A stretch of DNA of 64,000 nt, from IMG/VR virus record IMGVR_UViG_3300042516_005475, positions 166,048 to 230,047 of that record. One strand, given 5' to 3'. The notes beneath the pieces are model-generated. The model ran no database searches. It was not told where the DNA came from and worked only from the letters and a program-made list of their open reading frames with translations. The position numbers and the translations under genes were made by a program. Numbering within the stretch: position 1 is the stretch's first letter; the number at the start of each line of letters is the position of its first letter. Of the stretch, positions 1 to 60,838 are shown one piece after another.

Positions 1-432
1 ATTGCTCTCTTAGCAAAAGACAATGCAATTTACAATTGGTATAAAACTACTGAGAATAGTATTTGTACGGGTAACTCTATATATAGAGAAATTTCTGACC
101 ATTTCTCTAATGAAAAGCTCATCATCGAGGAAAGAATTGGTGTTAAACTAAGCGATTTATTTAAGCACAATCAATTTGATCTAATTAAACTAGATACTCA
201 AGGCTCTGAGTTAGATATTATACAGGGTGGTATGGATATATGTAAAGCAGCCAAAGGCATTATTATTGAAACCTCTATCAACAAATACAATGATGGAGCT
301 CCTTTATACGTGCAAGTAGTAGTGTTTATGAATAGTATAGGTTTTGAGCAGCGAGAAGAAATCGACATTTTCCACTATGGAAATGTTTATCAAAAAGACA
401 TTCTTTTCATTAAGAAAGGCTTGAATTCGTAA
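1..432 (+). CDS. FkbM-family methyltransferase, 5'-truncated by window edge
   Basis: Frame 1 is open from base 1; motifs SICTGNSIYRE, FDLIKLDTQGSELDIIQGG, IIIETS; paralog of 15962-16579. Confidence 0.85.
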   Translation: MALLAKDNAIYNWYKTTENSICTGNSIYREISDHFSNEKLIIEERIGVKLSDLFKHNQFDLIKLDTQGSELDIIQGGMDICKAAKGIIIETSINKYNDGAPLYVQVVVFMNSIGFEQREEIDIFHYGNVYQKDILFIKKGLNS

Positions 433-12812: not shown

Positions 12813-13069
12813 AGAATGCCTTGTTTCTTGACACATCTTGGTACGGAATAGATTTGTGTGCCAAAAGAATTCTGAATTTCTCTGGACTTTCCTCTGCAGG
12901 TCCTTCATAATCTCTTTAATGAATGAGATGCTTGATGCTCAGGATAGCCTCTACGATGTTGCTTTCGTCTCTGCAGAAGAGTATTATGAGGAAATGCAGC
13001 CGTTAGATTTAAACTAATTTTAAACTACGTTATTTGTATTTTATTTGTATTTAGATTAAATATAACTGT

Positions 13070-13372
13070 ATGTTTTGCCGCATTTTAAGCCTTTTTAGAT
13101 CGAAGCAGATATTGTTTCTGAATGTTGATTCTTTTAAAGAAATTAGTAAGCAGAACATACAAATCTTAGAAAACCAAAAAACAATTATGGCAGCTATCGA
13201 TAACCTCAATGAAGCACTACAACGCCTAGCAAAGGCAACTGACACCGCAGTGACTGTTCTCAATACTCCTCACCCAACCGAGGAAGCTATTCAGGCTGCT
13301 GCTGACCTAGTTCAAGCTCAGGCTCAACGTCTCGAGTCTGCAAGCGATAATGATCCTAGCACAATCGCCTAA
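13070..13372 (+). CDS. hypothetical helical protein
   Basis: Ala/Gln-rich C-terminal half; start may be 13187. Confidence 0.5.
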   Translation: MFCRILSLFRSKQILFLNVDSFKEISKQNIQILENQKTIMAAIDNLNEALQRLAKATDTAVTVLNTPHPTEEAIQAAADLVQAQAQRLESASDNDPSTIA

Positions 13373-13378
13373 ATCGTA

Positions 13379-13407
13379 GCCGCTGGAGAAATCTGGCGGC
13401 ATTTTTT
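13379..13407 (+). terminator. intrinsic terminator
   Basis: GCCGCTGGA-GAAA-TCTGGCGGC then ATTTTTT. Confidence 0.85.
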
Positions 13408-13839
13408 ATGTTCAAAAATAAAGGGTTTACAATATTAGAGATACTCTTAACAGTAGCCCTTTTAGCAACATTAATTGGTGTAGTGTCCTTTAACTTCAAT
13501 AGTTTATCAGATTCTGCTCAATACAAAGAAGCCAAAGAGAATCTAAAGACTCACTTAATAAGTCAGAAGTATAAGGCTGCTTATGAGCAGAAGGAGATTG
13601 AAGTTGATCTGAGTGTGGCAACAAATGATCTTAACATAGTAGATGCCACTAAGATAGTATTCTTCTCTGATGGTTCAGTTGAAGAGAGCTATATAATAGT
13701 AAGCTCTTTAGATGGTAAATATACTAACAAGATAGTAATTAATGTTATAGGTTATGTATCAGAGCAAGATACTTTCGATATTCTACCTATTGAGTCTAAA
13801 GACAGGTTACCGATAGAAAATTATGAAGAGTCTTTTTAA
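13408..13839 (+). CDS. type IV pilin/pseudopilin-like protein
   Basis: KNKG|FTILEILLTVALLATLIGVV: prepilin cleavage site, F+1, E+5, hydrophobic helix. Confidence 0.8.
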   Translation: MFKNKGFTILEILLTVALLATLIGVVSFNFNSLSDSAQYKEAKENLKTHLISQKYKAAYEQKEIEVDLSVATNDLNIVDATKIVFFSDGSVEESYIIVSSLDGKYTNKIVINVIGYVSEQDTFDILPIESKDRLPIENYEESF

Positions 13840-15318
13840 ATGGATAAAGTGGCATTGCTATGATATATTTGTTTGTGAGCACGTCAAAGGAGAAGGTATT
13901 CTCGTTGACGTTGGACGTAACAAATGTTGGTGGTGTACTAAATGCGGTTTATTAATCGAAACTTGTAACGGACCTTTTTTCTTATGGAAATTGACGAATT
14001 TATTGAAACGGAAACTGGCAAAAAAGCCATAAAGGCAATTGAAGAGCAAAAGAAAGAACTCTATGATAATTGGGGGTACACTAAAGAAGAGCTCGATCAC
14101 ATTGAGTTGTGTATGCTTAGGATTACTAATGAGATGTATCTAACATCAGAAGAGTGGGAAGAAGATGCTAGGCATTACCTTAAGATTATTGATAAGTATC
14201 GCAAGCTATTACTTCAGATTGCTAATGCTGCAGGTGTAAAGAGTCCAGTTGTTGATAGTACAACTGTAATGGAAGAAGCTATGTTTTATACTTTGCCTCA
14301 AGAAGTTAGGCAGATAAAAGAAAGAGCAGACTGGAATTAGACGAGGTTCCTGCTGGCGGTTCCTACGGTTTGCAGCCATAATCTTTACACAATGAAGACG
14401 ATGCAAATGGAAAAAGCCCTCGACTCAATCTCCGAGCAGCTGTTTGATCGTAGCCGCTCGCTTTCAATGTTCAATCTCGAATGCCCTACTTGCGGTGGAA
14501 CCATCAGCAAGTTTCGAGACGAACTCTCTGAGCGCGAATACCGTATCTCGGGTATGTGCCAAAAGTGTCAGGATGAAGTCTTTTCCGAGATTCCTGAAGA
14601 ATAAGCTTGAGGTTCCTGAGCTTTCGGCCTATACTGATTATAGAAAATAAGATATGAACTTGTTTACTTACAACGAAACTGAAAACTGGTACGAGTACTT
14701 TGACAAAGTCAATCTGCAGCTCACAGTTTACTCTGTGGAAGTTGAAAGCAACTGTGTAACTGTTCTTAATGGTCGTTCACCTATTCTTCAGAAGAGTATG
14801 GAGATGGCTAAGTCTAATATTAACTGGACTAAAGAAGAATCTTTCGGTATTGAGTTCATTAAAATGTTGAATCACGCTATTTCTAATAACTAAAATGACA
14901 TCTATTATTACTGATGATTTTCTCCAAGAGAAGATCTGGCAGAACGAATCATTCGAAAACGCAAAGGCTGAGTTTATCAACCTTATTAAGTCAGTCAATA
15001 TCAATCAAAAGGATAAGATGAAGATGGTGCGAGAGGCTATGAATGTCTCTACAAAAATAAAGCTTGATCAGTATGCTTTGAATGCCAAGTTTAAGTTTGA
15101 AGGTTTGGGGGTTATCTAATATGAAGAATCTTTTATATATGTTAGCGGTCGCGATTGTAGTATTCCTAATAGAGGCTTTACTCATTAAGTACTTGTGGAA
15201 CTTGTTGTTTCCAGAAATGTTTAATGCTCCATTCTTGGATTTCTGGCAGGCCTTGAGTATTCTGTTGTTATGTAACATCTTGTTTAAGACTCACTCAATA
15301 AAGAAATCAGAAGATTGA
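13823..15318 (+). other. run of small hypothetical early ORFs (13823, 13984, 14392, 14654, 14895, 15121)
   Basis: Contiguous + strand ORFs with promoters at 14354 and 14607; 14392 has CPTC...CQKC; the last has two hydrophobic helices. Confidence 0.6.
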
Positions 15319-15322
15319 GAAT

Positions 15323-15350
15323 GGCTACAGAGAAATCTGTAGCCTTTTAT
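15323..15350 (+). terminator. intrinsic terminator
   Basis: GGCTACAG-AGAAAT-CTGTAGCC then TTTTATTTT. Confidence 0.85.
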
Positions 15351-15372
15351 TTTTTACATATAAATATCTAGT

Positions 15373-15960
15373 ATGATTGATGATGTTTTAACAAGAAGCT
15401 CTTATAAAAACATTTGCCTACAGCAAAGAGAAGAGGTTAAAAACGTGTTCCCTGTATTGTTAAATAACATACTACCAAATAGAATTATTGAAGTAGGTAC
15501 TGGACATGGTGGTTTAACATTGTTCTTAAGGGATAATTTACCATCAACCTCAGATGTTTATTCTTTTGATATTGTTGAAAGTGTTTATCATAAAGATTTA
15601 AGAGATAATAAAATTAATATTTTTAATGGAAATATTTTTGAAGAAAAAACAGATTGGAATGAATTTATTTTAAAACAAGAATGGGAGCATTTATTTAACG
15701 TTAGCCCCAAAATTGTTATATGTGATGGAGGTTTCAAGCGAGGAGAGTTTAATGGTTTAGCAAAATATTTAAATATTGGGGATATTATAATGCTGCATGA
15801 TTATAGTACTGATAGAGAGTCTTTTGAAAAGTTAAACGTTTGGAATTGGTTAGAGTGTCAATATTCAGAAATTAAAAAAAGCTGTGAAACTTATAACCTA
15901 ATACCTTACATGCACGAAGAATTTCTAAATGTAGCGTGGGGATGTTTTCAAAAAAAATAA
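15373..15960 (+). CDS. class I SAM-dependent methyltransferase (CmcI-like)
   Basis: IIEVGTGHGG, YSFDI, ICDGG, GDIIMLHD; exact TATAAATA at 15359-15366. Confidence 0.75.
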   Translation: MIDDVLTRSSYKNICLQQREEVKNVFPVLLNNILPNRIIEVGTGHGGLTLFLRDNLPSTSDVYSFDIVESVYHKDLRDNKINIFNGNIFEEKTDWNEFILKQEWEHLFNVSPKIVICDGGFKRGEFNGLAKYLNIGDIIMLHDYSTDRESFEKLNVWNWLECQYSEIKKSCETYNLIPYMHEEFLNVAWGCFQKK

Positions 15961-15961
15961 T

Positions 15962-16579
15962 ATGTCTTTACAATTAATAAAAAAACACATTACCCCTCTT
16001 TCAATTCTTGATATTGGAGCTAATCACGGCCAATTTTATTGTGAAGCAAGAAAGATTTTTCCAGATAGTTATTTTTATTTAATAGAGGGTAACCCATACT
16101 GCGAACCTGCTCTTAAAGGTTTTGAGATAGATTACACTATAGCTCTCTTAAGTGATAAAGAAAAAGAAGTAGATTTTTTTATAAGAAATGGAGAAACAAG
16201 TTGTACAGGAAATTCTATTTATAAAGAAGATTCTGATTTTTATAAAGAGGGAAGCTACTTTAAAAAACAACTTTTCACTAAAACTTTAGACTCTGTATTA
16301 CAAGAGAAAAGATTCGACTTAATAAAATTAGATGTACAAGGATCAGAATTAGATATAATAAGAGGTGGTTTAGATATAGTTAAAGCAGCAAAAGCCTTGC
16401 TTTTAGAGGTAGCAGTAACCGATTTTAACATAGGTGCACCTAAAAAAGAAGAAGTTTTTCAATACCTCGCTTCTATTGGTTTTGAGCCAGTAGAAAAAAT
16501 AGCTGATTTAAACCATCCTATTTTGCATACTTTAGTACAGCAGGATTTTTTATTCTTAAATAAATCATATGATAAATAA
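15962..16579 (+). CDS. FkbM-family methyltransferase
   Basis: ILDIGANHGQF, LIEGNP, FDLIKLDVQGSELDII, LLLEV. Confidence 0.9.
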   Translation: MSLQLIKKHITPLSILDIGANHGQFYCEARKIFPDSYFYLIEGNPYCEPALKGFEIDYTIALLSDKEKEVDFFIRNGETSCTGNSIYKEDSDFYKEGSYFKKQLFTKTLDSVLQEKRFDLIKLDVQGSELDIIRGGLDIVKAAKALLLEVAVTDFNIGAPKKEEVFQYLASIGFEPVEKIADLNHPILHTLVQQDFLFLNKSYDK

Positions 16580-17255
16580 TATTTCTATTGTAAGTGTTCT
16601 TTTCGACTATCCTGAGCACTATTACCCTACTTTTTATAATAACGCTAAAAAGTACTTTCCGCTGGAAAATATTCATGTTGCGAGATACTCAAAGCTAATG
16701 GAGTTTATTTGTTATTACGATAAGCTTTATTTTTATAAAATTGAAAAACTTCTAGAATATGTAAAAGATAACATAAAAACAGAATATATGTTATTTTTAG
16801 ATGCTACAGATACAAATTTTTTAAAAGACCCATCAAATTTAGAAACAGATTTTAAAAACTATAACTGTTCAATTTTATTTTGTGCAGAAAGGGGCTTGTG
16901 GCCACCTACAGATTATAATCACTTATATAGTAATAAGAGAGTAATTTCAGAAAAGAAATATTTAAACTCTGGAGCTTATTTTGGGTATACAAAAAAAATT
17001 ATTGAGTGTTTGGAAGAGATAATTCAAGACCCTAGAGCTCATAAAGATGATCAAGCAAAATGGGCTATACAATATTTACACAAAGAAGATATAGTAATAG
17101 ATCAAGAATGTAATATTTTCTTTAGTTCTTATTTAAACAAGAACGATGTAATTTTTCATGACACCCACCCTAGTTTAAATAATTTAAATGCTTATATTGT
17201 TCATGATAACGGCGGTTATACTGAAGATACTTTAAAATTGGTACCTTTCTTTTAA
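16569..17255 (+). CDS. GT-A glycosyltransferase resembling the PLOD (lysyl hydroxylase) GT domain
   Basis: LFLDATD, ILFCAERGLWP, YLNSGAYFGY, DDQ, IDQECNIF, HDNG. Confidence 0.7.
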   Translation: MINNISIVSVLFDYPEHYYPTFYNNAKKYFPLENIHVARYSKLMEFICYYDKLYFYKIEKLLEYVKDNIKTEYMLFLDATDTNFLKDPSNLETDFKNYNCSILFCAERGLWPPTDYNHLYSNKRVISEKKYLNSGAYFGYTKKIIECLEEIIQDPRAHKDDQAKWAIQYLHKEDIVIDQECNIFFSSYLNKNDVIFHDTHPSLNNLNAYIVHDNGGYTEDTLKLVPFF

Positions 17256-17258
17256 ATT

Positions 17259-18242
17259 ATGAAAACAATTAGAATTACTCGGCAAGGCTTCCCAAATCAT
17301 GGTCAACACAGCTGGCCATCCTACTTTAAATTTATTTTATCAAAAAAGTATAATGTTATTTTAGATCCTATAAACCCTGATATAATTATTCAAACGGATC
17401 TATGTAATGATAGTACAAAAGTAGATTCCTATACTAATCATTTACCTACTTATTTTAATGCTTCTGACAAAAATAAGAAATTTATTTACATCTCAGGAGA
17501 AGCTGCTGATTTTCATAGTGGTTTAATTAATAACGATAACTGTTGGTCTTTAGGCTATCAAAAATTTTCTCACCCTCGTTATTTAAGACAACCTTCCTGT
17601 GTACTTGATGTTTGGACCCTTTTTGATGAGGCTAGGGTTGTAGACTCTCCTTTGAATTGGCTGACTCAAAAGAGAAATTTTGAGCAAATTTCCAAGAGAA
17701 ATAATAAATTTTGCTGTATAACTCAATCAAGTAATGTTGAATATAGAGGCAAAGTATTCGATAAACTTACTGAATATAAAACTGTAGACTCCTCAGGACC
17801 TTGGAGACAAAACCTATCAGGTAACGAAACTCTTAATAAGTACCAATGGATTAACCCTATTTATACAGGCAGAATGGATGGTTTAACATACAGAGAAAAA
17901 ATAGAGTTCTTTAAAAAATACAAATTTAATATTGCAATACATTTAACTAACACTGATTATATTGTTCAAGAAAAAATATACCATTCATTTTTTAGTGGTT
18001 GTATACCAATATTTTTTGGTAATAAATACATTCTTGAAGAGGGTTTTAACCCAGATAGTTTTATAAATTTACATGATTACTCTGATTTAAATTCTTTTCT
18101 AGAGCTTGTAAAAAATATAGACAACGATCAGAATCTATATAAAAAGTATATTGAATCTCCAATTTTTATAAATAATAAGTTACCAGAGTATTTTGACTTT
18201 GATTACACATTATCATTTTTAGAAAAAATTATAGAAGCCTAA
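17259..18242 (+). CDS. GT10-like (alpha-1,3-fucosyltransferase-type) glycosyltransferase
   Basis: KFCCI...SN, YKTVDSSG, KYKFNIAI, DYIVQEKIYHSFFSGCIPIFFG. Confidence 0.75.
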   Translation: MKTIRITRQGFPNHGQHSWPSYFKFILSKKYNVILDPINPDIIIQTDLCNDSTKVDSYTNHLPTYFNASDKNKKFIYISGEAADFHSGLINNDNCWSLGYQKFSHPRYLRQPSCVLDVWTLFDEARVVDSPLNWLTQKRNFEQISKRNNKFCCITQSSNVEYRGKVFDKLTEYKTVDSSGPWRQNLSGNETLNKYQWINPIYTGRMDGLTYREKIEFFKKYKFNIAIHLTNTDYIVQEKIYHSFFSGCIPIFFGNKYILEEGFNPDSFINLHDYSDLNSFLELVKNIDNDQNLYKKYIESPIFINNKLPEYFDFDYTLSFLEKIIEA

Positions 18243-19009
18243 TGAAATATTGCTTTACCACCTTAGCTGTAGGAGAACCTTACGAATCTAAAACTAAAGA
18301 GTTCTTTTCAAATTTAATAACTCGTACTAGTAATTGTGATTTTTTTGTTACTACTACTAATACAGAACTATCTCATGAAAGCGATAGAGTTAAAATAAAT
18401 GTTATAAATCCACCATCTTTAAGAACTACTCATGATAGGCTTGGTTTTAACTTTCATTTAAATTTAAAATGTTTATCTCTTAAACATGTATTAAATCACC
18501 AAAAAGAAATGTTAAAACAGGATACTTCCTTTGAAAATTATGATTTTGTTATATTTTGCGACGGAGATTGGTCGATGCATGAGGAATTTTCTGAAGAAAA
18601 AATCCTTTCAATGCTAGAACGTTTAAAAAATGAAGATATTGATTTTCTCTTTGAAAGACCAGCTGGGATAGGGGGAGCAAAAAGTGACCCACAGCAATGT
18701 TTTTTTAGAAATAAATTAGAGGATTATGATGTTTTCTCTCATAACAAGTGGGATGAGGCTCATGTACCTAATGAACAGTTTCTAGTTTTTAAAAATAACA
18801 ACAAGTTTAAGTTTTTTGTACAAAGATGGGAAATGTTCCTTTGGTACTGTATTGCTAATGATATTACTAGTTACCCTGATGGGTTTGAGATTGGTGTTTC
18901 AGCGCACGAGGCTGATATGAAATATGCTTATTACGGTTATTTTAATTACCATTTAACAAACTGTTTTTCTTTTTTAAACAAATACGGAGATAAAAGTATT
19001 AGATTTTAA
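18242..19009 (+). CDS. putative glycosyltransferase
   Basis: FTTLAVGE..Y N-terminus, VIFCDGDW DxD motif, in GT operon. Confidence 0.55.
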   Translation: MKYCFTTLAVGEPYESKTKEFFSNLITRTSNCDFFVTTTNTELSHESDRVKINVINPPSLRTTHDRLGFNFHLNLKCLSLKHVLNHQKEMLKQDTSFENYDFVIFCDGDWSMHEEFSEEKILSMLERLKNEDIDFLFERPAGIGGAKSDPQQCFFRNKLEDYDVFSHNKWDEAHVPNEQFLVFKNNNKFKFFVQRWEMFLWYCIANDITSYPDGFEIGVSAHEADMKYAYYGYFNYHLTNCFSFLNKYGDKSIRF

Positions 19010-19947
19010 AGCCAATTATTTAAATTTAATATACTGTATGTCTTATCTAAAGAAGGTTTTAGAGAAAGATTCTTTTCATAATATTCTCTAGCATTTTTAG
19101 AAATAAAAGCTAATAATCTCTCATTAGATATAACTTCAAAATATTTCTCCATAAATTTATCAGCATGTTCTTTTGTACCTGTTCTATAAAGAGTCATATC
19201 ATGAGGTCTAGGTATAGATATATAATGATAGTTTGGGATTAACGGCTCACTTAAAATAGATTCATATTCATACCTAATTATAGGTACCCCGCACCCAAAA
19301 CATTCTACATCTCTATAACAAAACTCACCCCTACCGTCTATAGAAATAGCGAGTTTGTGAGTAATCAATTGATTAAAATAATCATTAGGGTTAGTAGGAG
19401 CAAAATCAGTTACATAATTTTTATCTAAGTGGGATAAAAATGATCTATCTTGAATAGATGTTCCTTTAAAAAATAAAGTATTGCTCTTTTCTTTAATATA
19501 TTGTCTCTTATAATAAAACATATCTAAATTATCAAAAAGAGACTGAAAATATATCCAAGGTTTATATTTGTAAAAGAATTCCCCTGCATGGGATTTTACC
19601 TTGCTAGGATTAAATTGAGAAAACAATATAGACTTACAAAATGGGTTTTCTTTCTCATTTAAAGAGGCGTGAGAGAAATCATCAGATACTGAAATAACAT
19701 GAAACTCTCCTGTGTCTGCGTTTTCAATTACATACTCACACTCTAACAAGAGAAAGTTGTTTGAAATACTGTTTTTTAATTGCACTTGCCATCTTTCTCT
19801 ATCAGCTCCCTCAAAATATCTATTTTCTTCAACCTCAAAATTTTTTTTTAAAAAATGAGTAAAACTATCCCAGAAAAAATTATAATTTCTAAAATATCTT
19901 GTTTTTTCATTGCAAGGATTATGTACTATAATTTTAGGTTTACCCAT
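19006..19947 (-). CDS. putative GT-B glycosyltransferase
   Basis: LFFKG, KLAISIDGRGEFCYRDVECFGCGVP, LIPNYHYI, IxKNAREYY. Confidence 0.6.
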   Translation of the reverse strand: MGKPKIIVHNPCNEKTRYFRNYNFFWDSFTHFLKKNFEVEENRYFEGADRERWQVQLKNSISNNFLLLECEYVIENADTGEFHVISVSDDFSHASLNEKENPFCKSILFSQFNPSKVKSHAGEFFYKYKPWIYFQSLFDNLDMFYYKRQYIKEKSNTLFFKGTSIQDRSFLSHLDKNYVTDFAPTNPNDYFNQLITHKLAISIDGRGEFCYRDVECFGCGVPIIRYEYESILSEPLIPNYHYISIPRPHDMTLYRTGTKEHADKFMEKYFEVISNERLLAFISKNAREYYEKNLSLKPSLDKTYSILNLNNWL

Positions 19948-47732: not shown

Positions 47733-47999
47733 TTATTTGCGAGCGTTTAAAAAGGCTGCTACATCTGGACTGATTGGACCTTTATCGGTGGCCTGTGGTC
47801 TAGGCTTTACATCTGGGCGAGTTGGTTGAAGAGGGTGTCTCTTAGGTGCTAATGGCTTTTGTGGGCCTGGAGTTGGTAGAGGTTTTGTATCTGGTTTAAT
47901 ATCAGGCTCAACCTCTGGCTCTTCAACAGGTGCTGCTGGAGCCTCAAACAAGGTTTTGCTTAATAAATTATTGACTAAATCGTCAAAGTTATCTTTCAT
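47733..47999 (-). CDS. small Pro-rich protein
   Basis: TLFE|APAAP...PE/KP/TP-rich; coupled to 46580 gene. Confidence 0.6.
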   Translation of the reverse strand: MKDNFDDLVNNLLSKTLFEAPAAPVEEPEVEPDIKPDTKPLPTPGPQKPLAPKRHPLQPTRPDVKPRPQATDKGPISPDVAAFLNARK

Positions 48000-50472: not shown

Positions 50473-51861
50473 TTAGGCTGTTGTTGAGTAACCAGCGGCA
50501 CCTAAACCAGATCTTGATGTCCCAATTTGGGTTGCAGAATCAGTAGCTATTACCCCTAAATTAGATACAAGATTTGTAATACTAACAGTTGAACCAGAGG
50601 AGTTTTCCCCATATCCAAAAATAGCCTTATCCCCACCATAGCTAGCAGCTGCAAGTCCATACCTAGCGGTACCTACCCCTGTTGTATTCGTTGCAATTAC
50701 CCCTGTATTAGATACTAGATTAGAAACACTAACAACTCCACCCTGTTGACTATTAGTAGTACCAAAACCAAAAATAGCCTTATCAGTGCTATACTTCGCA
50801 GCTCCAAGGTGAGTTCTCGCTGTTCCAACCCCTGTTGTATCAGTAGATACTACCCCTGTGTTAGATACTAGATTTGACATACTAACAGTTACAGAAAAGC
50901 TTGTAGACCCGTAAGCAAAAATAGCTTTATCAGTACCGTAACCTGTTCCTGCTAATCCGTATCTTGCTGTTCCGACCCCTGTTGTATCAGTAGATACTAC
51001 CCCAGTGTTTGATACGAGGTTAGTTATAGCAGTTGAAACAAAAGAGTCTGAAAAACCATAACCAAATATAGCTTTATCTGTACCATAACTACAAGCCCGA
51101 GTGTTTTCTCTACTTGTACCTACTCCTGTTACATCAGTAGATACTACACCAGTGTTTGAGACGAGGTTAGTCATAGATAAAATGGTATTATTATAACCGT
51201 ATCCAAATATTCCTTTATCTATACCATAAGTAGCTGCACCAAGTGTGCTTCTAGCAGTACCAACTCCCGTTACATTACTAGCAACGACTCCTGAGCTGGA
51301 TACTAAATTTTTTAAAGATAAGTAAGAACCACCACCATCACTTCCATAGGCAAATATCGCCTTTTGTGTAGGCGTACTAGCAGCGCCTGACGGTGTTGGA
51401 GTTGGTGTAACTGTAGAGGTTGGAGTAACAGTATTGGTTGGAGTAACTGTAATGGTTGGTGTAACTGTTGGTGTTACAGAGTTAGTCGGTGTAACTGTAA
51501 TGGTTGGTGTAACTGTTGGTGTTACAGAGTTAGTCGGTGTAACTGTGATGGTTGGTGTTACCGTAATTGTCGGAGTCGGAGTCGGTGTGATGTTATAACC
51601 AGAAACAATTGTATCACCAGCAGTAGTATTTATTGTAAAAGTATCCCCGTATATGAAAGCTGTATTTGAATAATTAAAACCTATTACCCCTTGATTTGGA
51701 CTTAAAGCGGTTGGGTCCCACCCGTCAATTAAACCATAAACTTTATTTGTATAAGCTGTAACACCACCTATAGTAACAAAAGAATTAAACGGTATAAATG
51801 TGTCTGTGTAGCAGAACACATAATTATATCTCGGATCTTTGAATACTAAATTCGCAGCCAT
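50473..51861 (-). CDS. putative fibre/adhesin: Thr-Pro linker plus Kelch-like beta-propeller
   Basis: TPTxTV repeats; ~6 repeats of DKAIFGYG...TNLVSNTGVV.TD.TGVGTAR; TATTTA 51867-51872. Confidence 0.7.
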   Translation of the reverse strand: MAANLVFKDPRYNYVFCYTDTFIPFNSFVTIGGVTAYTNKVYGLIDGWDPTALSPNQGVIGFNYSNTAFIYGDTFTINTTAGDTIVSGYNITPTPTPTITVTPTITVTPTNSVTPTVTPTITVTPTNSVTPTVTPTITVTPTNTVTPTSTVTPTPTPSGAASTPTQKAIFAYGSDGGGSYLSLKNLVSSSGVVASNVTGVGTARSTLGAATYGIDKGIFGYGYNNTILSMTNLVSNTGVVSTDVTGVGTSRENTRACSYGTDKAIFGYGFSDSFVSTAITNLVSNTGVVSTDTTGVGTARYGLAGTGYGTDKAIFAYGSTSFSVTVSMSNLVSNTGVVSTDTTGVGTARTHLGAAKYSTDKAIFGFGTTNSQQGGVVSVSNLVSNTGVIATNTTGVGTARYGLAAASYGGDKAIFGYGENSSGSTVSITNLVSNLGVIATDSATQIGTSRSGLGAAGYSTTA

Positions 51862-51888: not shown

Positions 51889-54165
51889 TTAACTCAAGGA
51901 GTATCCAGCTGCTGCTAAAGCATATCTTACAGTACCAACACCAGTTGTATCAGTTGCAACCACACCAGTGTTTGAAACTAAGTTAGTAATAGAAACAAAA
52001 ACATAACTACTACTGAAACCGTAACCAAATATTGCCTTATCTCCTCCATATCCAGCTGCTGCTAAGCCGTATCTAGCAGTACCAACACCAGTTGTATCAG
52101 TTGCAACTGTTCCAGTATTATTTACCAAATTAGTCATAGAAAAACTTGAAAACAGTTGACCACCATACCCAAATATTGCTTTATCAGTTCCATAACTAGC
52201 TGCAGCTAGACCTTCTCTAGAAGTCCCTACACCCTCAGTATTACCAGCAAAAACTCCAGTGTTAGATACTAAATTAGTCACTGATCCTAGAGTACTCATA
52301 GCATTATCTACACCATACCCAAATATAGCTTTATCTGTGCCGTAACTAGCAGCAGCTAAGTTAGCTCTTGATGTACCAGCCACTTGAACATCATTAGCAA
52401 CAATACCCGCATTTGAAACTAAATTACTATAGGATAAACCAAAATCAGCCGTACCATAAGCAAATACAGCTTTATCAGTACCATATGTAGCAGCAGCTCT
52501 ACCTATTCTACTAGTTCCAACACCTGTTGTATCAGCTGCAACTACGCCTGTATTACTTACCAAATTTGTCATAGATACAGCAACACTAGTTTTACCATAA
52601 CCAAAAATAGCTTTATCAGTACCATATCCAGCAGCAGCTAAGTAAGATCTTGATGTTCCAACACCTGTTGTATCAGCTGCAACCACGCCTGTATTAGACA
52701 CAAGATTAGTAATAGAAGTATTACCTCCATCCCCTTCACCAAACCCAAAAATTGCTCTTTGAGTGCCTGCAGCTGCCGCTGCAGATGGTGTAGGTGTTGG
52801 TGTAACTGTGTTGGTTGGTGTAACTGTAATTGTTGGTGTAACTGTGTTAGTTGGTGTAACAGTTGGTGTAACAGAGTTGGTCGGGGTAACAGTATTGGTT
52901 GGTGTTACTGTAACTGTTGGTGTAACTGTGTTAGTTGGTGTAACAGTTGGTGTAACAGAGTTGGTCGGGGTAACAGAGTTGGTAGGTGTTACTGTTGGTG
53001 TAACTGTTGGAGTAACAGAGTTGGTAGGAGTAACAGAGTTGGTAGGTGTAACAGAGTTGGTAGGTGTAACAGTAGGGGTTACAGTTTTGGTTGGTGTAAC
53101 AGTAGGGGTTACAGTTTTGGTTGGTGTAACAGTAGGGGTTACAGTTTTGGTTGGTGTAACAGTAGGGGTTACAGTAGGGGTAACTGCAGGTACAGGTTCA
53201 GAAAAATCTAAAACCAATGATACCATTCTTGGGGATACCTGAATAGCACTAATTGCATTACCGTAAGCATCATAACCGTTAACAACAACAGTGGAAAGAG
53301 CTGGAAAGTTAACATCATCGTTATATAATGGAACGTAATTACCTATTTGAGATAACTGAATTGGTAATGGAGCAGAGTAATCTAATACTGTAGCAGGATC
53401 AATGTTGTAAACTAATGAGGCTGTTCTTGGAAATACTTGTACAGCAGATAGCGCATTACCGTATGCATCATAACCATTAACAACAACTGTAGAAAGAGCT
53501 GGGTAAGTAACATTCCCAGCATACAGCTGAGCATAATTTGTTACCTGCTGTAATTGGATTGGATTTGCAGCAGTTTGGTTCCATGTTAAAGTTGATAAGG
53601 ATTTAACAAGTTGCAATTGTCTAGGAAATATTTGTACTGCGCTTATGGCAGTACCATAAGCATTGTAACCATTTACTACAATGCAACTCAAAGGATCAAT
53701 GCCATTTGTAACCTGTACATAATTAGTTACCTGAGATAATTGTATGGGACTAGGCATTGTTACGTTTAAAGCAGATACCACCTCAGTTACAAGACTAATG
53801 GTTCGAGGGAATATTTGTACATGTGCAATTTGATTGCCATAGGCATTGTAACCTTCTACAATAGTTGTTGATAGTGCAGGAAATGTCGCATCATTATTAT
53901 ACAAAGGAATATAGTTAGTTACTTGAGACAGCTGTATGGGGTTTGGTATGGTAGGGTTGGTTGCAACATCGTTTGCGTACCTTACTAATTTTACAGTTCT
54001 AGGGAATACTTGAACAGCAGATAAGGCGTTACCGTATGCATCATAACCATTAACAACGATGGTGCTAAGAGGAGGGAAAGCTGGATCGTTAATCACTACA
54101 TAATTTGTCACCTGTGACAATTGAATGGGTAGTGGTTCGTTAAGATTAAGATCTGTTAAAAGCAT
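51889..54165 (-). CDS. putative fibre/adhesin: N-terminal repeats, Thr-Pro linker, Kelch-like propeller
   Basis: ~4 PIQLSQVTNY...VVNGYDAYGNA.SAVQVFPR repeats; VTPTNS tract; DKAIFGYG repeats; start moved to 54165. Confidence 0.7.
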   Translation of the reverse strand: MLLTDLNLNEPLPIQLSQVTNYVVINDPAFPPLSTIVVNGYDAYGNALSAVQVFPRTVKLVRYANDVATNPTIPNPIQLSQVTNYIPLYNNDATFPALSTTIVEGYNAYGNQIAHVQIFPRTISLVTEVVSALNVTMPSPIQLSQVTNYVQVTNGIDPLSCIVVNGYNAYGTAISAVQIFPRQLQLVKSLSTLTWNQTAANPIQLQQVTNYAQLYAGNVTYPALSTVVVNGYDAYGNALSAVQVFPRTASLVYNIDPATVLDYSAPLPIQLSQIGNYVPLYNDDVNFPALSTVVVNGYDAYGNAISAIQVSPRMVSLVLDFSEPVPAVTPTVTPTVTPTKTVTPTVTPTKTVTPTVTPTKTVTPTVTPTNSVTPTNSVTPTNSVTPTVTPTVTPTNSVTPTNSVTPTVTPTNTVTPTVTVTPTNTVTPTNSVTPTVTPTNTVTPTITVTPTNTVTPTPTPSAAAAAGTQRAIFGFGEGDGGNTSITNLVSNTGVVAADTTGVGTSRSYLAAAGYGTDKAIFGYGKTSVAVSMTNLVSNTGVVAADTTGVGTSRIGRAAATYGTDKAVFAYGTADFGLSYSNLVSNAGIVANDVQVAGTSRANLAAASYGTDKAIFGYGVDNAMSTLGSVTNLVSNTGVFAGNTEGVGTSREGLAAASYGTDKAIFGYGGQLFSSFSMTNLVNNTGTVATDTTGVGTARYGLAAAGYGGDKAIFGYGFSSSYVFVSITNLVSNTGVVATDTTGVGTVRYALAAAGYSLS
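52790..53190. repeat. Thr-Pro (mucin-like) coding repeat; shorter copy at ~51374-51590
   Basis: GGTGTAAC(A/T)G-based 12/18/30-nt units encoding TPTV, TPTNS, TPTKT. Confidence 0.85.
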
Positions 54166-54210
54166 ACAGTTACATATATTTATCGTAGAGGAGAATAAAT
54201 AATTAAGCAT

Positions 54211-55807: not shown

Positions 55808-56317
55808 ATGGCCTCACAGAAAGATATTGACAAGGCATACTTGCGTATGTGTGTAGAGTGGGCTAGACTATCTACAGCTCGTCGACGCAAGGTTGGCTGT
55901 CTAATTGTTAAAAGTGGCCAGATAATCTCTGATGGTTATAATGGTACTCCTAAAGGGTTTGATAACAATTGTGAAGAAGAAGTTAATGGAGAGCTAGTAA
56001 CAAAATCAATTGTTCTTCATGCGGAGAGTAACGCCATTACTAAACTAGCTAAATCTAATAATTCTTCTGATGGTGCCACCTTATATGTTACTTGCTCTCC
56101 GTGCTTTGAATGTAGTAAGCTTATTATCCAGGCTGGTATAAAGAGAGTAGTACATTGCCACTTTTATCGAAATACAAGTGGCTTAGTGTTGCTTGATCAA
56201 GCTAATATTGAATGGAGTTTTTATGATCTTAGCTCAGAATTCTCTGCTGACCATTTTCAATCGATATTGCATTCTTCTTCTCGTTCACAGGAGGGTAAGC
56301 AGCAGTTGCAGCAGTAG
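55808..56317 (+). CDS. dCMP deaminase
   Basis: GYNGTPKG, LHAESNAI, YVTCSPCFECSKLIIQAGI; start moved to ATG 55808. Confidence 0.92.
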   Translation: MASQKDIDKAYLRMCVEWARLSTARRRKVGCLIVKSGQIISDGYNGTPKGFDNNCEEEVNGELVTKSIVLHAESNAITKLAKSNNSSDGATLYVTCSPCFECSKLIIQAGIKRVVHCHFYRNTSGLVLLDQANIEWSFYDLSSEFSADHFQSILHSSSRSQEGKQQLQQ

Positions 56318-58700
56318 GCATTGTATTCTCTCTGCCTAATGTTCTTACATCATCTGCAGATGCCATTAATGTTAATGGCAGATTTCTGAATTGATGAGAA
56401 TGTCTTCCAACATTAACTGGAATCTTTTCAGTAAAGTAAAGAGTAAAGTTACAAGGATCTCCACCACAGTTTAACACCCCGCGATAGTTAACATTTGGTA
56501 AAACATATCCCTCTAAGAACACTTCTTCAGTTTCCTGAAACTCAATAGGAGCAGTAATATGCTGTACAGTAAGTTCTCCTTCAACGTGAGCACTTCCAGC
56601 TACTACAATATTTTGGGTAATGCCTAGATTACTATCAACTAATACCTGTTTACCTTGAGATTGTCTTAATACTAATATATCGGATGAGATAGATAGTCTC
56701 TTTTTAGCATTAATATTAACTTCATTATTAGAAGCAATGTTAACTTGTTCTCCAGTTAAGTTTGTAATTGACCCAGCTATATCAACTGGACCATAGGATT
56801 TAAGAGCGACCCCACCTGAACCAACAAGTACATTCCATCTGTTACAAACGTTTAAATTATATGTACCACCTGGCAAGTCTTCTACATTAACATACTCCAT
56901 CATAGGAGATTCTTTTTGACTTATATATACACCTTGAGCAGCAACTATAACCTCGTTGTTGGTTATTTTACCGGTGTTATCATATCTAATATTAGGTAAA
57001 TCGTTCATTACTAATCCAATAGTTTCAAGTTTATGTTTAGTAATTTGAATGATCTTGGATCCACCTAACCCCATTTGTTTCTCTAAGGCTGTAATCTCAT
57101 TAATCTTAGATTCAAACTTTAGCTTTAAAGCATCCTTCTTATCTTCTACTGCCCAAATACCATCTTGAGTTGAAGGAGAAATACCTGTACCGTTACATAC
57201 TGGGCATGGACCACTTCCCAAGAAGTTTCTTGGTTGTGCTGGTGGCTGTATTAATTGAGACGGTACATTGTAATTGTAAACAATAATATTCTGACCTAGA
57301 TAACCAGTAGCTCGTCTTACACTAAAGCTAGAGTCGTTAATCATATTATAAGCAGTTGTCCAATTACCACCCATTGGATTAGTTGCTGTAATAATTGCTG
57401 TGCTATTAACTGGTATATAAAGTGAGAATGTTTCTCTTCTGCTCCATATAGCTGGTCTGTTAGCTGCTGAACAAACAGGGCATTTAGCATATGAACCAGA
57501 TTGGTTTTGTAGAGGGGAGGTATATGGGAACAAATTATTATATGAACCTGTTTGATTGCATCTCTGTATTTCAAATAATTGCTTTACTGCTGCAATTTCT
57601 TCAGCAATATCTTTCCATTGTTGAATAGCTGACTTGTTAAAGTTACCTATCTTTTCAAAATGATCACCTCTAATAATCTCATCATGATCTTTTTCAGTGT
57701 ATTCATTCTTATACCCTCGAGTTGTTTCAAAAGAATCTGCTAGTGTTAAATTTTGTTTGTTTTGAGTGTTAAGTTCAATAGTAGCCTGGTTGTTCATTTC
57801 TCTATATGAACCATTATAGGCTGTCATTCTTATAGCCTCTTTATTGTCAGTATTAACTACTTCTATAGTACCACCCTTTTGGTTTAGCACCATTTTACCT
57901 CTATAGGTTTCAGTATCTGGAGTATAACCCTGAGTATCAGCTGGATTAACATTGTTGTAATCTCCTGGATAGTCTACTGGGTAAGTTTCTAGATTGCCTT
58001 GATAAACACCTAACCAATCCTGAGTACCGTAGTGAGCTGCGAATACAACTGGGTAATTAGCATCACCTTCTCTAAAGAATACCCAAACGTGAGCTCCAAC
58101 ATCAGGAATAGCAAATTGACCTTTAGTACAATTTGAATAGGTGTGTGGTTTATATAAATGAGTATATGGATTGACTCTATTAGGGTTACCTGTAGATATT
58201 ACTCCTGTGTTTGTATTATATGTTTTGCTAAAGGCATCTGATGGTTGTAATTCGTTAATTTCATATATTCTGCCATACTTCTCTCCAGTACCATCAACGT
58301 TAAGAGAGTATTTTGAATTAGCAGATAAAGTTGGTATAGATGTATCAACTCTGTTAGAATCTGATATAGAAGCTTTACTATCCCAATTATAATACTTGCC
58401 AGATGCACCACCGCTAACAACTGGCAAGGCTACTTCAGCCCAAGGTAATAACCTTTTAATTTCCTCATTAACTGAGGTTAGAGAAGATTCAATGTTGTTA
58501 CCCATGAATCTAAAATTCTTATCTGTATTCTCTTGCTTGAAGCTGCTATAAACAGTTTGAGAGATATGAGGCACCCATACCTTTACTCTGCCTCTTTTTT
58601 GAGGATCATTGTTCTGAACAACAATGCCGAGATAATGACCGTAATAATACGGTAGTTGTTTTCTACTGGGGCTACCTTCTAATGCGTTAGAATATCTCAT
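56229..58700 (-). CDS. baseplate hub/spike protein (T4 gp5/VgrG-like)
   Basis: GIVVQNNDPQKRGRVKVWVP, IPDVGAHVWVFFREGDANYPV OB fold; beta-helix repeats; CPVC Zn-finger insert. Confidence 0.75.
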   Translation of the reverse strand: MRYSNALEGSPSRKQLPYYYGHYLGIVVQNNDPQKRGRVKVWVPHISQTVYSSFKQENTDKNFRFMGNNIESSLTSVNEEIKRLLPWAEVALPVVSGGASGKYYNWDSKASISDSNRVDTSIPTLSANSKYSLNVDGTGEKYGRIYEINELQPSDAFSKTYNTNTGVISTGNPNRVNPYTHLYKPHTYSNCTKGQFAIPDVGAHVWVFFREGDANYPVVFAAHYGTQDWLGVYQGNLETYPVDYPGDYNNVNPADTQGYTPDTETYRGKMVLNQKGGTIEVVNTDNKEAIRMTAYNGSYREMNNQATIELNTQNKQNLTLADSFETTRGYKNEYTEKDHDEIIRGDHFEKIGNFNKSAIQQWKDIAEEIAAVKQLFEIQRCNQTGSYNNLFPYTSPLQNQSGSYAKCPVCSAANRPAIWSRRETFSLYIPVNSTAIITATNPMGGNWTTAYNMINDSSFSVRRATGYLGQNIIVYNYNVPSQLIQPPAQPRNFLGSGPCPVCNGTGISPSTQDGIWAVEDKKDALKLKFESKINEITALEKQMGLGGSKIIQITKHKLETIGLVMNDLPNIRYDNTGKITNNEVIVAAQGVYISQKESPMMEYVNVEDLPGGTYNLNVCNRWNVLVGSGGVALKSYGPVDIAGSITNLTGEQVNIASNNEVNINAKKRLSISSDILVLRQSQGKQVLVDSNLGITQNIVVAGSAHVEGELTVQHITAPIEFQETEEVFLEGYVLPNVNYRGVLNCGGDPCNFTLYFTEKIPVNVGRHSHQFRNLPLTLMASADDVRTLGRENTMPTAATAAYPPVNEKKNAISIENGQQRILS

Positions 58701-60835: not shown

Positions 60836-60838
60836 ACT

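What the first reader, a model, noticed from the sequence alone, without database searches (positions are those of the whole stretch)
15373..19947. Late glycosylation/methylation island matched by mucin-like fibres
Seen: four GT-like and two methyltransferase genes behind an exact TATAAATA, another FkbM at 1-432 and a GT-like gene at 42423; two fibre-like proteins carry long Thr-Pro tracts. Known: Thr/Pro-rich linkers are common O-glycosylation sites; FkbM-type enzymes often O-methylate sugars. Inference: phage-encoded virion glycan coat; host-surface remodelling is the alternative.
Basis: partly seen in the sequence, partly recalled or inferred. Interest (0 to 1): 0.6.

Follow-up and report, generated by a model that had tools for sequence, protein, structure and literature searches.

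The report
Phage sugar-coating genes for mucin-like fibres
A 230-kb lake-water phage carries a six-gene block of sugar-adding and sugar-methylating enzymes that, judged from related phages, is the variable part of a phage-encoded system that probably coats its threonine/proline-rich tail fibres with sugars, started by an enzyme family otherwise known from mucin-type glycosylation in protists.

Summary
The observation mostly holds. Window 15373-19947 encodes two SAM methyltransferases (a CmcI/FtsJ-like one and an FkbM) and four glycosyltransferases: PLOD-type GT, GT10, a GT6/GT8-like GT-A fold and a GT-B fold. None has a membrane segment. The block has 28.6% GC against 36.0% for the genome. A second FkbM (1-432) and two fibre proteins with (VTPT)n tracts (50473-51861, 51889-54210, next to the baseplate hub) are real. 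The "GT-like" gene at 42423 has no support.

The main evidence lies outside the window. The same genome encodes a GT60 polypeptide GlcNAc-transferase (PF11397, 246 bits) and a two-domain HtrL/GT2 enzyme. Both sit inside the tail/baseplate gene run, between four more TP-tract proteins.

In 79 related viral loci, TP-rich ORFs lie directly upstream of GT60: 165 upstream against 1 downstream. Homologues of all six island genes occur there between GT60 and HtrL/GT2.

So the island is most likely a displaced, variable glycan-elaboration module for O-glycosylating virion fibres. XacN1, an isolated phage with the same GT60, has Schiff-positive virion proteins.

No biochemical evidence exists for this phage. 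I rate it a new variant of known phage/giant-virus virion glycosylation.

The parts
15323..15352 (+). Intrinsic-terminator-like hairpin (9-bp stem, 5 G-C pairs) with a T-run. It separates the island from the upstream small genes.
15359..15366 (+). Exact TATAAATA, 6 nt before the first start codon. It is a possible T4-type late promoter element.
15373..15960 (+). Class-I SAM methyltransferase, 195 aa. It is FtsJ/CmcI-like and a probable sugar O-methyltransferase.
   Evidence: FtsJ 27.3 bits; homologues hit PF04989; 11 homologues inside GT60-HtrL modules.
15962..16579 (+). FkbM-family methyltransferase, 205 aa.
16569..17255 (+). Stand-alone PLOD-type glycosyltransferase domain (GT-A), 228 aa.
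   Evidence: PF25342 5e-18; phrog_61..
17259..18242 (+). GT10-family (fucosyltransferase-type) glycosyltransferase, 327 aa.
   Evidence: PF00852 4e-11; 32% identity to the S-SKS1 fucosyltransferase; 71-75% identical copies in 9 viral contigs.
18242..19009 (+). GT-A fold glycosyltransferase, GT6/GT8-like retaining type, with an invariant DxD. 255 aa, no Pfam family.
19006..19947 (-). GT-B fold glycosyltransferase (GT4/GT90-like), 313 aa, convergent with the other five genes.
1..432 (+). C-terminal part of a second FkbM methyltransferase. The gene starts 176 nt before the window. It ends a cluster that includes an RmlA-like gene.
50473..51861 (-). Fibre-like protein, 462 aa. It has a (VTPT)n tract at residues about 87-165 and about six C-terminal 48-aa repeats. 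Proposed glycan acceptor.
51889..54210 (-). Fibre-like protein, 773 aa. It has five N-terminal repeats of about 95 aa, a (VTPT)n tract at residues about 338-479, and C-terminal 48-aa repeats. Proposed glycan acceptor.
56229..58700 (-). gp5/VgrG-like baseplate hub. Included as context: it places the two TP-tract proteins in a tail module.
   Evidence: phrog_430. PF04717 4.9e-11.

Best explanation
The island is the variable 'elaboration and capping' module of a phage-encoded, cytoplasmic protein O-glycosylation system. The system's targets are the Thr-Pro tracts of tail-fibre and baseplate-associated proteins.

Proposed mechanism:
1. The TP-tract proteins are made late, together with the tail genes.
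2. A soluble GT60-family polypeptide alpha-GlcNAc-transferase (genome 83184-84473, outside the window) attaches the first sugar. The acceptor is most simply Thr in the (x-T-P-T)n tracts.
3. The adjacent two-domain HtrL_YibB/GT2 enzyme (genome 84470-86146) adds a conserved core.
4. The four window GTs (PLOD-type, GT10, GT6/8-like GT-A, GT-B) extend or branch the glycan. Deoxyhexose and fucose-type sugars are likely, because the phage also carries RmlA-, RmlB- and RmlD-like genes.
5. The two window methyltransferases and the second FkbM O-methylate the terminal sugars.

The result would be mucin-like, protease-resistant, extended glycosylated linkers on the fibres.

What is shown:
- The enzyme family and fold assignments.
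- The absence of membrane segments.
- The positions of the genes.
- The conserved synteny.

What is inferred:
- The acceptor.
- The order of steps.
- The sugars.
- The biological role.
For: Family assignments:
- Searches give the island enzyme families and folds.
- GT60: PF11397 8.4e-73, 246 bits against a cut-off of 21, and phrog_24687 4.8e-159.
- GT60 enzymes start mucin-type O-glycosylation on Thr in Dictyostelium and T. cruzi, and modify Hyp on Skp1 (PMC8724618 and PMC6939170).

Position in this genome:
- One + strand run reads: tail sheath, tail tube, gp25- and gp6-like wedge, two TP-tract ORFs, GT60, HtrL/GT2, two ORFs, then TP-tract ORFs of 1242 and 3533 aa.
- Seven TP-tract proteins in the genome carry about 2,100 aa of tract and about 900 Thr.

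Related loci:
- In 79 loci there are 165 TP-rich ORFs in 434 kb upstream of GT60, all on its strand, against 1 in 740 kb downstream.
- 61 of the 69 loci with at least 1 kb of upstream sequence have a TP-rich ORF ending less than 400 nt before GT60.
- The GT60 to HtrL/GT2 interval holds a variable module of 2 to at least 9 GT/MT genes.
- Homologues of all six island genes occur in that interval. The PLOD-GT/GT10/GT-A/MT cassette does so in 8 of the 9 loci found with GT10; the ninth is cut off upstream.
- The ORF6 family occurs fused to FkbM.

Other support:
- Island GC is 28.6% against 36.0% for the genome, which fits a mobile module.
- No hydrophobic segment occurs in any of the enzymes or fibres: maximum Kyte-Doolittle 19-residue mean 1.26.
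- XacN1 has a GT60 49% identical and an HtrL/GT2 42% identical to this phage's, lying beside baseplate wedge genes and a 3313-aa protein with PT tracts. Its virions give at least two Schiff-positive protein bands.
- The TATAAATA copy before the island is one of 12 gene-proximal copies. Four others precede morphogenesis genes.
Against: - There are no glycoproteomic or expression data for this phage or its close relatives.
- The window island lies 98 kb from the GT60 core and about 30 kb from the window's own fibres, so its link to them rests on synteny in other phages.
- The 79 loci are not independent. At 70% GT60 identity they fall into 3 lineages including this phage's. Two of these show the TP linkage and one (L021-L023) does not.
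- Several of the families (HtrL_YibB, GT25, GT9 in XacN1, Rml genes, FkbM) are typical of LPS and O-antigen loci.
- The Schiff-positive XacN1 bands were not identified.
- The HtrL/GT2 C-terminal domain weakly hits a T-even DNA glucosyltransferase PHROG (4.7e-6).
- The TP-tract proteins have not been shown to be in virions.
Confidence: 0.62

Rival explanations
1. Host-envelope remodelling. The enzymes would modify host LPS core, O-antigen or capsule precursors during infection, for example to block superinfection or to change the surface of the lysing cell. The TP-tract proteins would be plain flexible linkers.
For: HtrL_YibB, GT25, GT2 and FkbM families and RmlA/B/D-like genes are typical of LPS and O-antigen clusters. 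XacN1 has a GT9 gene next to its cluster whose best hit is to its host.
Against: No membrane-spanning protein, flippase, polymerase, ligase or polyprenol-phosphate priming transferase occurs in the island or in the GT60 locus, and all the enzymes are soluble. GT60 is a polypeptide-acting family that was absent from all 14 control prokaryote genomes. The core genes sit inside the tail-fibre gene run, with a strongly one-sided linkage to TP-rich ORFs.
Confidence: 0.15
2. The virion is glycosylated, but on other proteins. The glycans would go on capsid, tail tube or sheath proteins, as at the C-termini of capsid and tail-tube subunits in mycobacteriophages, and not on the TP tracts.
For: This is the only phage precedent with mapped sites (Freeman et al. 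2023, as summarised in PMC12619734). The XacN1 glycoprotein bands are unidentified. The L021-L023 lineage has GT60 without TP-rich neighbours.
Against: GT60 enzymes act on Thr-rich mucin repeats or on a Pro-derived residue. The tight, same-strand adjacency of TP-rich ORFs to GT60 would have no explanation.
Confidence: 0.12
3. DNA hypermodification. The GTs and MTs would decorate modified bases in phage DNA to evade restriction.
For: Phage GTs that build glycans on DNA are known (Pyle et al. 2024, cited in PMC12619734). There is a weak PHROG hit of the HtrL/GT2 C-terminal domain to beta-glucosyl-HMC alpha-glucosyltransferase.
Against: The genome has no ThyA/dCMP-hydroxymethylase family gene and uses ThyX. 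The families present (GT60, GT10, PLOD-GT, GT6-like) are protein- or glycan-acting. The genes lie in the fibre module.
Confidence: 0.04

Closest known systems
Mucin-type O-glycosylation started by GT60 polypeptide alpha-GlcNAc-transferases in protists (Dictyostelium, Trypanosoma cruzi), and the cytoplasmic Skp1 Hyp-glycosylation pathway (PhyA, Gnt1, bifunctional PgtA, AgtA)
   Same: The same initiating enzyme family (PF11397/GT60). The acceptors are Thr/Pro-rich repeats. As in the Skp1 pathway, the enzymes are soluble and cytoplasmic, and the initiator is followed by a two-domain glycosyltransferase and then by further soluble GTs, including a fucosyltransferase-type step.
   Different: This system is encoded by a bacteriophage and linked to virion fibre genes. 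The extension module is hypervariable and includes O-methyltransferases. No prolyl hydroxylase is linked to GT60 in 88 loci, although the genome has two P4H-like genes elsewhere. The acceptor and the sugars are untested.
Mycobacteriophage virion glycosylation (Freeman et al. 2023, Cell Host Microbe; described in PMC12619734)
   Same: Phage-encoded glycosyltransferases modify virion structural proteins in the host cytoplasm.
   Different: There, short C-terminal sites on capsid and tail-tube subunits are modified by one or two GTs. Here, long mucin-like TP tracts on fibres are the candidates, the initiator is GT60, at least 7 GT domains and 3 methyltransferases are present, and sugar-nucleotide genes are also encoded.
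Xanthomonas jumbo phage XacN1 and relatives (Xoo-sp13, Stenotrophomonas CM1 and RAS14)
   Same: Orthologous GT60 (45-51% identity across the four isolates) and, in XacN1, HtrL/GT2 (42%). In XacN1 the cluster lies next to baseplate wedge genes and a giant protein with PT tracts. Schiff-positive virion proteins were reported for XacN1.
   Different: The XacN1 module holds a carbamoyltransferase and a GT9 rather than GT10, PLOD-GT and FkbM. Its PT tracts are short. The paper did not connect ORF334 to GT60 or to particular proteins.
Chlorovirus PBCV-1 capsid glycosylation (A064R, A061L, A075L) and Mimivirus fibril glycosylation clusters (PMC9614988)
   Same: Virus-encoded soluble GTs and SAM methyltransferases build methylated deoxyhexose-containing glycans on virion surface proteins. 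Mimivirus fibrils are glycosylated by variable gene clusters. ORF6 resembles A075L in fold.
   Different: Those viruses have eukaryotic hosts. PBCV-1 glycans are N-linked to the capsid protein, and there is no GT60 initiator or TP-tract acceptor.
Lysogenic-conversion O-antigen modification operons (gtrABC type)
   Same: Phage-encoded glycosyltransferases.
   Different: Those systems are membrane-embedded (flippase, bactoprenol GT, serotype GT) and belong to temperate phages. Nothing comparable is present here.

Membership tests
GT60 / Pfam PF11397 polypeptide alpha-GlcNAc-transferase (core enzyme, genome 83184-84473) | Full-length match to the family profile above the curated cut-off | tested here: met
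   246.3 bits against a cut-off of 21, covering profile positions 2-44 and 101-350 of 352.
GT60 / Pfam PF11397 polypeptide alpha-GlcNAc-transferase (core enzyme, genome 83184-84473) | Transfers GlcNAc from UDP-GlcNAc to Thr or Hyp of a polypeptide | not testable with these tools
   Inferred only from the family (PMC8724618, PMC6939170) and from adjacency to TP-tract ORFs.
GT10 fucosyltransferase (17259-18242) | Match to the catalytic C-terminal domain PF00852 above the cut-off | tested here: met
   43.3 bits against 23.9, residues 158-298. 32% identity to the annotated fucosyltransferase of phage S-SKS1.
GT10 fucosyltransferase (17259-18242) | Uses GDP-fucose as donor | not testable with these tools
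   No GDP-fucose synthesis gene was identified. The NAD-dependent epimerase/dehydratase-family genes score best as the dTDP-glucose dehydratase and dTDP-dehydrorhamnose reductase types.
FkbM methyltransferase (15962-16579; 1-432) | Match to PF05050 / TIGR01444 above the cut-offs | tested here: met
   58.2 bits against 22.7 and 60.3 against 37.7 for the island copy. 49.3 bits for the second copy.
PLOD (LH3) glycosyltransferase domain (16569-17255) | Match to PF25342 above the cut-off | tested here: met
   65.6 bits against 27.
PLOD (LH3) glycosyltransferase domain (16569-17255) | Fusion to a 2OG-Fe(II) lysyl hydroxylase domain, as in PLOD enzymes and the cyanophage phrog_61 proteins | tested here: not met
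   The 228-aa protein covers only the GT part (phrog_61 positions 262-402 of 689).
GT-A retaining glycosyltransferases of GT6/GT8 type (18242-19009) | GT-A fold with a conserved DxD | tested here: met
   pLDDT 92.9. Foldseek probability 1.0 and TM about 0.5 to alpha-1,3-GalT, GTA/GTB and BoGT6a. D107 and D109 are invariant in 33 sequences.
GT-A retaining glycosyltransferases of GT6/GT8 type (18242-19009) | Sequence membership of a curated family | tested here: not met
   No Pfam, NCBIfam, PHROG or PDB-sequence hit. About 12% identity to the structural matches.
GT-B glycosyltransferases (19006-19947) | Two-Rossmann GT-B fold | tested here: met
   pLDDT 93.7. Foldseek probability 1.0 to MshA, WaaG, SdgB, POGLUT1 and A075L. 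Atlas neighbours carry PF13524 and PF05686.
T4-type late promoter | TATAAATA placed as a -10 element ahead of late genes | tested here: inconclusive
   The motif is exact, and other copies precede tail tube, wedge, protease and hub genes. But it lies 6 nt from the ATG, the octamer is not enriched overall, and no late sigma factor was sought.
Mycobacteriophage-type virion glycosylation | Glycans demonstrated on virion proteins | not testable with these tools
   The only data are Schiff staining of the distant relative XacN1.
gtrABC-type serotype conversion | Membrane-embedded flippase and GT components | tested here: not met
   No hydrophobic segment in any island or core enzyme.

The most novel reading that the evidence does not exclude
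A large clade of freshwater (and some plant-pathogen) jumbo myoviruses would run a eukaryote-like, GT60-initiated mucin-type O-glycosylation pathway in the bacterial cytoplasm. The pathway would have a conserved core and a hypervariable, horizontally exchanged extension/methylation cassette, so that fibre glycans diversify like O-antigens. This would be a glycan layer of phage-host (or phage-grazer or phage-protease) adaptation not yet described. It would also raise the question of an evolutionary link between phage and protist pp-alpha-GlcNAc-transferases.
Probability: 0.35. Interest if true: 0.85.

Novelty: new variant of a known kind. Interest (0 to 1): 0.7.

Why it matters
Phage virion glycosylation has been demonstrated only in mycobacteriophages and hinted at in a few jumbo phages. 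If the reading here is right, abundant lake phages carry mucin-like, heavily O-glycosylated and O-methylated tail fibres, built by their own enzymes and started by a family thought of as protist-specific.

That would affect several questions:
- how fibres resist proteases and stay extended;
- how phages stick to or avoid surfaces and grazers;
- how host range is read from fibre sequences alone.

It would also give a soluble bacterial-cytoplasm toolkit for mucin-type glycoengineering. The idea is directly testable because cultured phages (XacN1, Xoo-sp13, CM1, RAS14) carry the same core enzymes.

Tried and rejected
- blastn of the island against 50,697 phage records found no match.
- Sequence searches of the PDB with GT60, the ORF5 profile and the ORF6 profile found nothing useful. 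Folds were needed instead.
- NCBIfam gave nothing for the four GTs or for GT60.
- The 42423 gene has no family. Only four 'hypothetical' homologues were found, and there is no profile similarity to the ORF5 GT-A family. I rejected it as part of the system.
- Sigma-70-type promoter scan of the island: 32 sites against 30 expected, so uninformative.
- Hyp rather than Thr as the acceptor: the genome has two P4H-like 2OG oxygenases, but neither they nor the Rml or GT2 genes have homologues within 10 kb of GT60 in 88 related loci. Hyp is therefore not favoured, though not excluded.
- DNA glycosylation via hydroxymethyl-pyrimidines: no ThyA-family gene.
- Literature searches for GT60 in phages, for mucin-like or glycosylated jumbo-phage fibres, and for Thr/Pro-rich phage fibres found no description of this system. 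The library is limited to open-access papers. Freeman et al. 2023 is not held and is cited second-hand.
- The 'moraphage' paper (PMC12619734) mentions core GTs in a different aquatic lineage but gives no link to TP tracts.
- Not used: read laying, complex prediction and the large representative-protein search. No claim here rests on binding, on expression or on absence of relatives.

Full report
**Context.** The window is bases 166048-230047 of a 230,047-bp IMG/VR virus record estimated complete. The genome has 36.0% GC. It is a T4-superfamily-like jumbo myovirus:
- tail sheath at genome 57158-59656 and tail tube at 60349-61248;
- gp25-like and gp6-like baseplate wedge genes at 72449-74738;
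- head maturation protease;
- gp5/VgrG-like hub in the window at 56229-58700(-);
- RNA ligase, DNA ligase and ThyX.

Near-identical DNA of the island occurs in at least 20 lake-water or freshwater metagenome studies. The host is unknown.

**The observation.** Six tightly packed genes fill 15373-19947. Five are on the + strand and the sixth is convergent, overlapping the fifth by 4 nt.
- Pfam and NCBIfam identify an FtsJ-like class-I SAM methyltransferase, an FkbM methyltransferase, a PLOD-type GT domain and a GT10 domain. All four score above the curated cut-offs.
- The remaining two have no family hit. Each belongs to a family of hundreds of metagenomic 'hypothetical proteins'.
- With 33-sequence alignments both fold confidently, at pLDDT 92.9 and 93.7.
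- ORF5 is a GT-A fold nearest the GT6 enzymes alpha-1,3-galactosyltransferase, blood-group GTA/GTB and BoGT6a, and has an invariant DxD.
- ORF6 is a GT-B fold nearest MshA, WaaG, the protein O-GlcNAc transferases SdgB and GtfA, POGLUT1 and chlorovirus A075L.

So 'four GTs and two methyltransferases' is correct. The island is also a compositional island. Every gene has 27-30% GC, against 36% for the genome and 35-41% in the flanks.

The ORF at 1-432 is the end of a second FkbM gene.

The two Thr-Pro proteins are at 50473-51861(-) and 51889-54210(-). Their tracts are imperfect DNA tandem repeats with periods of 12-84 nt. Their C-termini carry about six 48-aa repeats that match the uncharacterised phrog_15511.

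The gene at 42423 has no detectable relation to glycosyltransferases.

**The promoter claim.**
- TATAAATA sits at 15359-15366. It follows a good terminator-like hairpin at 15323-15344 and lies only 6 nt before the ATG.
- The octamer is not over-represented: 5 in the window against 10 expected, and 26 in the genome against about 50 expected from base composition.
- Its placement is nevertheless non-random. Twelve of the 26 copies end within 60 nt upstream of a start codon, often 6-10 nt away.
- Four of those precede the tail tube, gp25-like wedge, head maturation protease and baseplate hub genes.

Late expression is therefore plausible but unproven.

**What links the island to the fibres.** A search of viral contigs with the GT10 protein found nine loci with 71-75% identical copies.
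- In these loci the PLOD-GT, GT10, ORF5-type GT-A and ORF1-type methyltransferase genes are kept as a cassette, while the flanking genes have nothing in common with the window.
- There the cassette lies between two genes. One has a strong PF11397 match (1.5e-65). The other is a roughly 560-aa HtrL_YibB+GT2 protein. The whole block is bordered by several ORFs with long (x-T-P-T)n tracts.
- PF11397 is the Gnt1/GT60 family. The link between that Pfam entry and CAZy GT60 is from my own knowledge.
- GT60 enzymes are polypeptide alpha-GlcNAc-transferases. They start mucin-type O-glycosylation on Thr-rich repeats in Dictyostelium and T. cruzi, and they modify hydroxyproline of Skp1 in a cytoplasmic pathway (PMC8724618, PMC6939170).

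The window's own genome has this enzyme at 83184-84473 (246 bits; phrog_24687 4.8e-159), followed immediately by the HtrL/GT2 protein at 84470-86146. The pair lies inside the contiguous + strand tail module. That module runs from the wedge genes, through TP-tract ORFs of 770 and 579 aa, GT60, HtrL/GT2 and two more ORFs, to TP-tract ORFs of 1242 and 3533 aa. Genome-wide, seven proteins carry about 2,100 residues of TP tract with about 900 threonines.

**Generality.** GT60 has at least 132 relatives in IMG/VR, and 80 loci were fetched.
- Leaving out the copy of this same phage, TP-rich ORFs number 165 in 434 kb upstream of GT60, all on its strand, against 1 in 740 kb downstream.
- 61 of the 69 loci with at least 1 kb of upstream sequence have a TP-rich ORF ending less than 400 nt before GT60.
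- The usual order is: TP-rich ORFs, GT60, a variable module, HtrL/GT2, then a 125-aa ORF.
- The variable module ranges from two genes (a GT25 and an unknown 293-aa protein) to nine or more. It includes SAM methyltransferases and GT2-like, GT10 and GT7-like enzymes.
- Homologues of each of the six window genes occur inside that interval in some loci. One ORF6 homologue is fused to an FkbM domain.

In the window's genome the interval is empty, and the island sits 98 kb away. So the island looks like a relocated copy of this exchangeable module, which fits its low GC.

*Caveat.* The loci are related. At 70% GT60 identity they form three lineages. Two of them, including this phage's, show the TP linkage. 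The third (L021-L023) does not.

**Other glyco-genes of the phage.**
- An RmlA-like nucleotidyltransferase at genome 159495-160268.
- An RmlB-like dTDP-glucose 4,6-dehydratase at 146184-147125 (357 bits, just under the equivalog cut-off).
- A weak RmlD-like reductase.
- Two GT2 genes next to a P4H-like 2OG oxygenase at 12846-15719(-), which is 5 kb from another TP-tract ORF.
- A second P4H-like gene.

Together with the CmcI/rhamnosyl-O-methyltransferase affinity of the ORF1 family, these suggest O-methylated 6-deoxyhexoses in the glycan, as in chlorovirus and mimivirus glycans (PMC9614988).

**Mechanism and alternatives.**
- None of the island or core enzymes, nor the fibre proteins, has a hydrophobic segment. 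Any glycosylation must therefore be direct, sequential and cytoplasmic, as for chlorovirus capsid glycans, Skp1 and mycobacteriophage virions.
- I found no flippase, polymerase or priming transferase in the island or the GT60 locus. That argues against host LPS or capsule remodelling, although several of the families are common in such loci.
- The genome lacks a ThyA/dCMP-hydroxymethylase gene, and the families present are not DNA-acting. That argues against DNA hypermodification.
- Thr is the simplest acceptor. No prolyl hydroxylase is linked to GT60 in 88 loci, but Hyp is not excluded.

**Experimental anchor.** The only cultured phages with this GT60 are Xanthomonas phages XacN1 and Xoo-sp13 and Stenotrophomonas phages CM1 and RAS14, at 45-51% identity.
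- In XacN1, GT60 (ORF334) and HtrL/GT2 (ORF330, 42%) bracket a carbamoyltransferase and two unknown genes.
- They lie next to a GT9 gene and a 3313-aa protein. That protein follows the baseplate wedge genes and carries PT tracts near its C-terminus.
- The XacN1 paper reports at least two Schiff-positive glycoprotein bands in virions. It suggests the phage GTs make them, but does not identify the proteins or the enzyme family (PMC5852040).

**Verdict.** The finding becomes sharper. It is a GT60-initiated, mucin-type O-glycosylation system for TP-tract tail fibres, with a conserved core in the fibre module and a mobile elaboration/methylation cassette, of which the window island is one copy.

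Virus-encoded virion glycosylation is known in mycobacteriophages, chloroviruses and mimiviruses, so this is a new variant rather than a new category. I found no paper describing the GT60/TP-tract system in phages. My confidence in the mechanism is about 0.6. The enzyme assignments are much firmer than the acceptor assignment.

Noticed in passing
window 13408-13839 (+): A 143-aa protein with a prepilin-type N-terminal methylation motif (PF07963, 21.8 bits against a cut-off of 21.2): a phage-encoded pilin-like protein just upstream of the island.
   Followed up: no
genome 161110-161490, about 4.6 kb before the window start (locus L102:11110-11490): A SET-domain protein (PF00856, 5e-10), i.e. 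a possible protein lysine methyltransferase. It lies in the same cluster as the RmlA-like gene and the second FkbM.
   Followed up: no
genome 12846-15719 (-) and 6118-7494 (-) (locus L018): A P4H-like 2OG-Fe(II) oxygenase followed by two GT2 genes, 5 kb from a seventh TP-tract protein on the same strand. This could be a second, hydroxyproline-directed glycosylation route.
   Followed up: partly
window 1892-3988 (+) and 8767-12267 (+): Two large paralogous proteins (698 and 1166 aa) share an N-terminal domain of about 300 aa (phrog_20946, function unknown). They flank a virion structural protein (6287-7684) and an RNA ligase (7730-8746).
   Followed up: no
whole genome; window copies at 15359 and 58729-58736 (-): TATAAATA is depleted overall, yet nearly half of its copies lie 6-60 nt before start codons, often 6-10 nt before. 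That spacing would give leaderless or near-leaderless late transcripts if the motif is a T4-type -10 element.
   Followed up: partly
window 50815-51558 and 52452-53175: The TP tracts and the 48-aa C-terminal repeats of the fibre genes are imperfect DNA tandem repeats (periods 12, 18, 30, 48, 84, 141 and 147 nt). This suggests that tract length changes by slippage or recombination.
   Followed up: partly
loci L021-L023 and L047: One GT60 lineage (54% identical to this phage's enzyme) has HtrL before GT60 and no TP-rich neighbour. L047 has a Ser-Gly-Thr repeat ORF in the place of the TP-rich ORF.
   Followed up: partly
proteins P0167, P0213 and P0238 (homologues of window 19006-19947): Natural fusions of the ORF6-type GT-B enzyme with an FkbM methyltransferase (P0167) and with a HAD-type acid phosphatase domain PF03767 (P0213, P0238).
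   Followed up: no
genome 22426-23532 (locus L103:2426-3532): A 368-aa protein behind a TATAAATA with a weak hit to the PhuZ tubulin PHROG (E 6e-4).
   Followed up: no
window 47996-49360 (-): A 454-aa amidoligase-like protein (phrog_2443, 4e-9) near the fibre genes.
   Followed up: no
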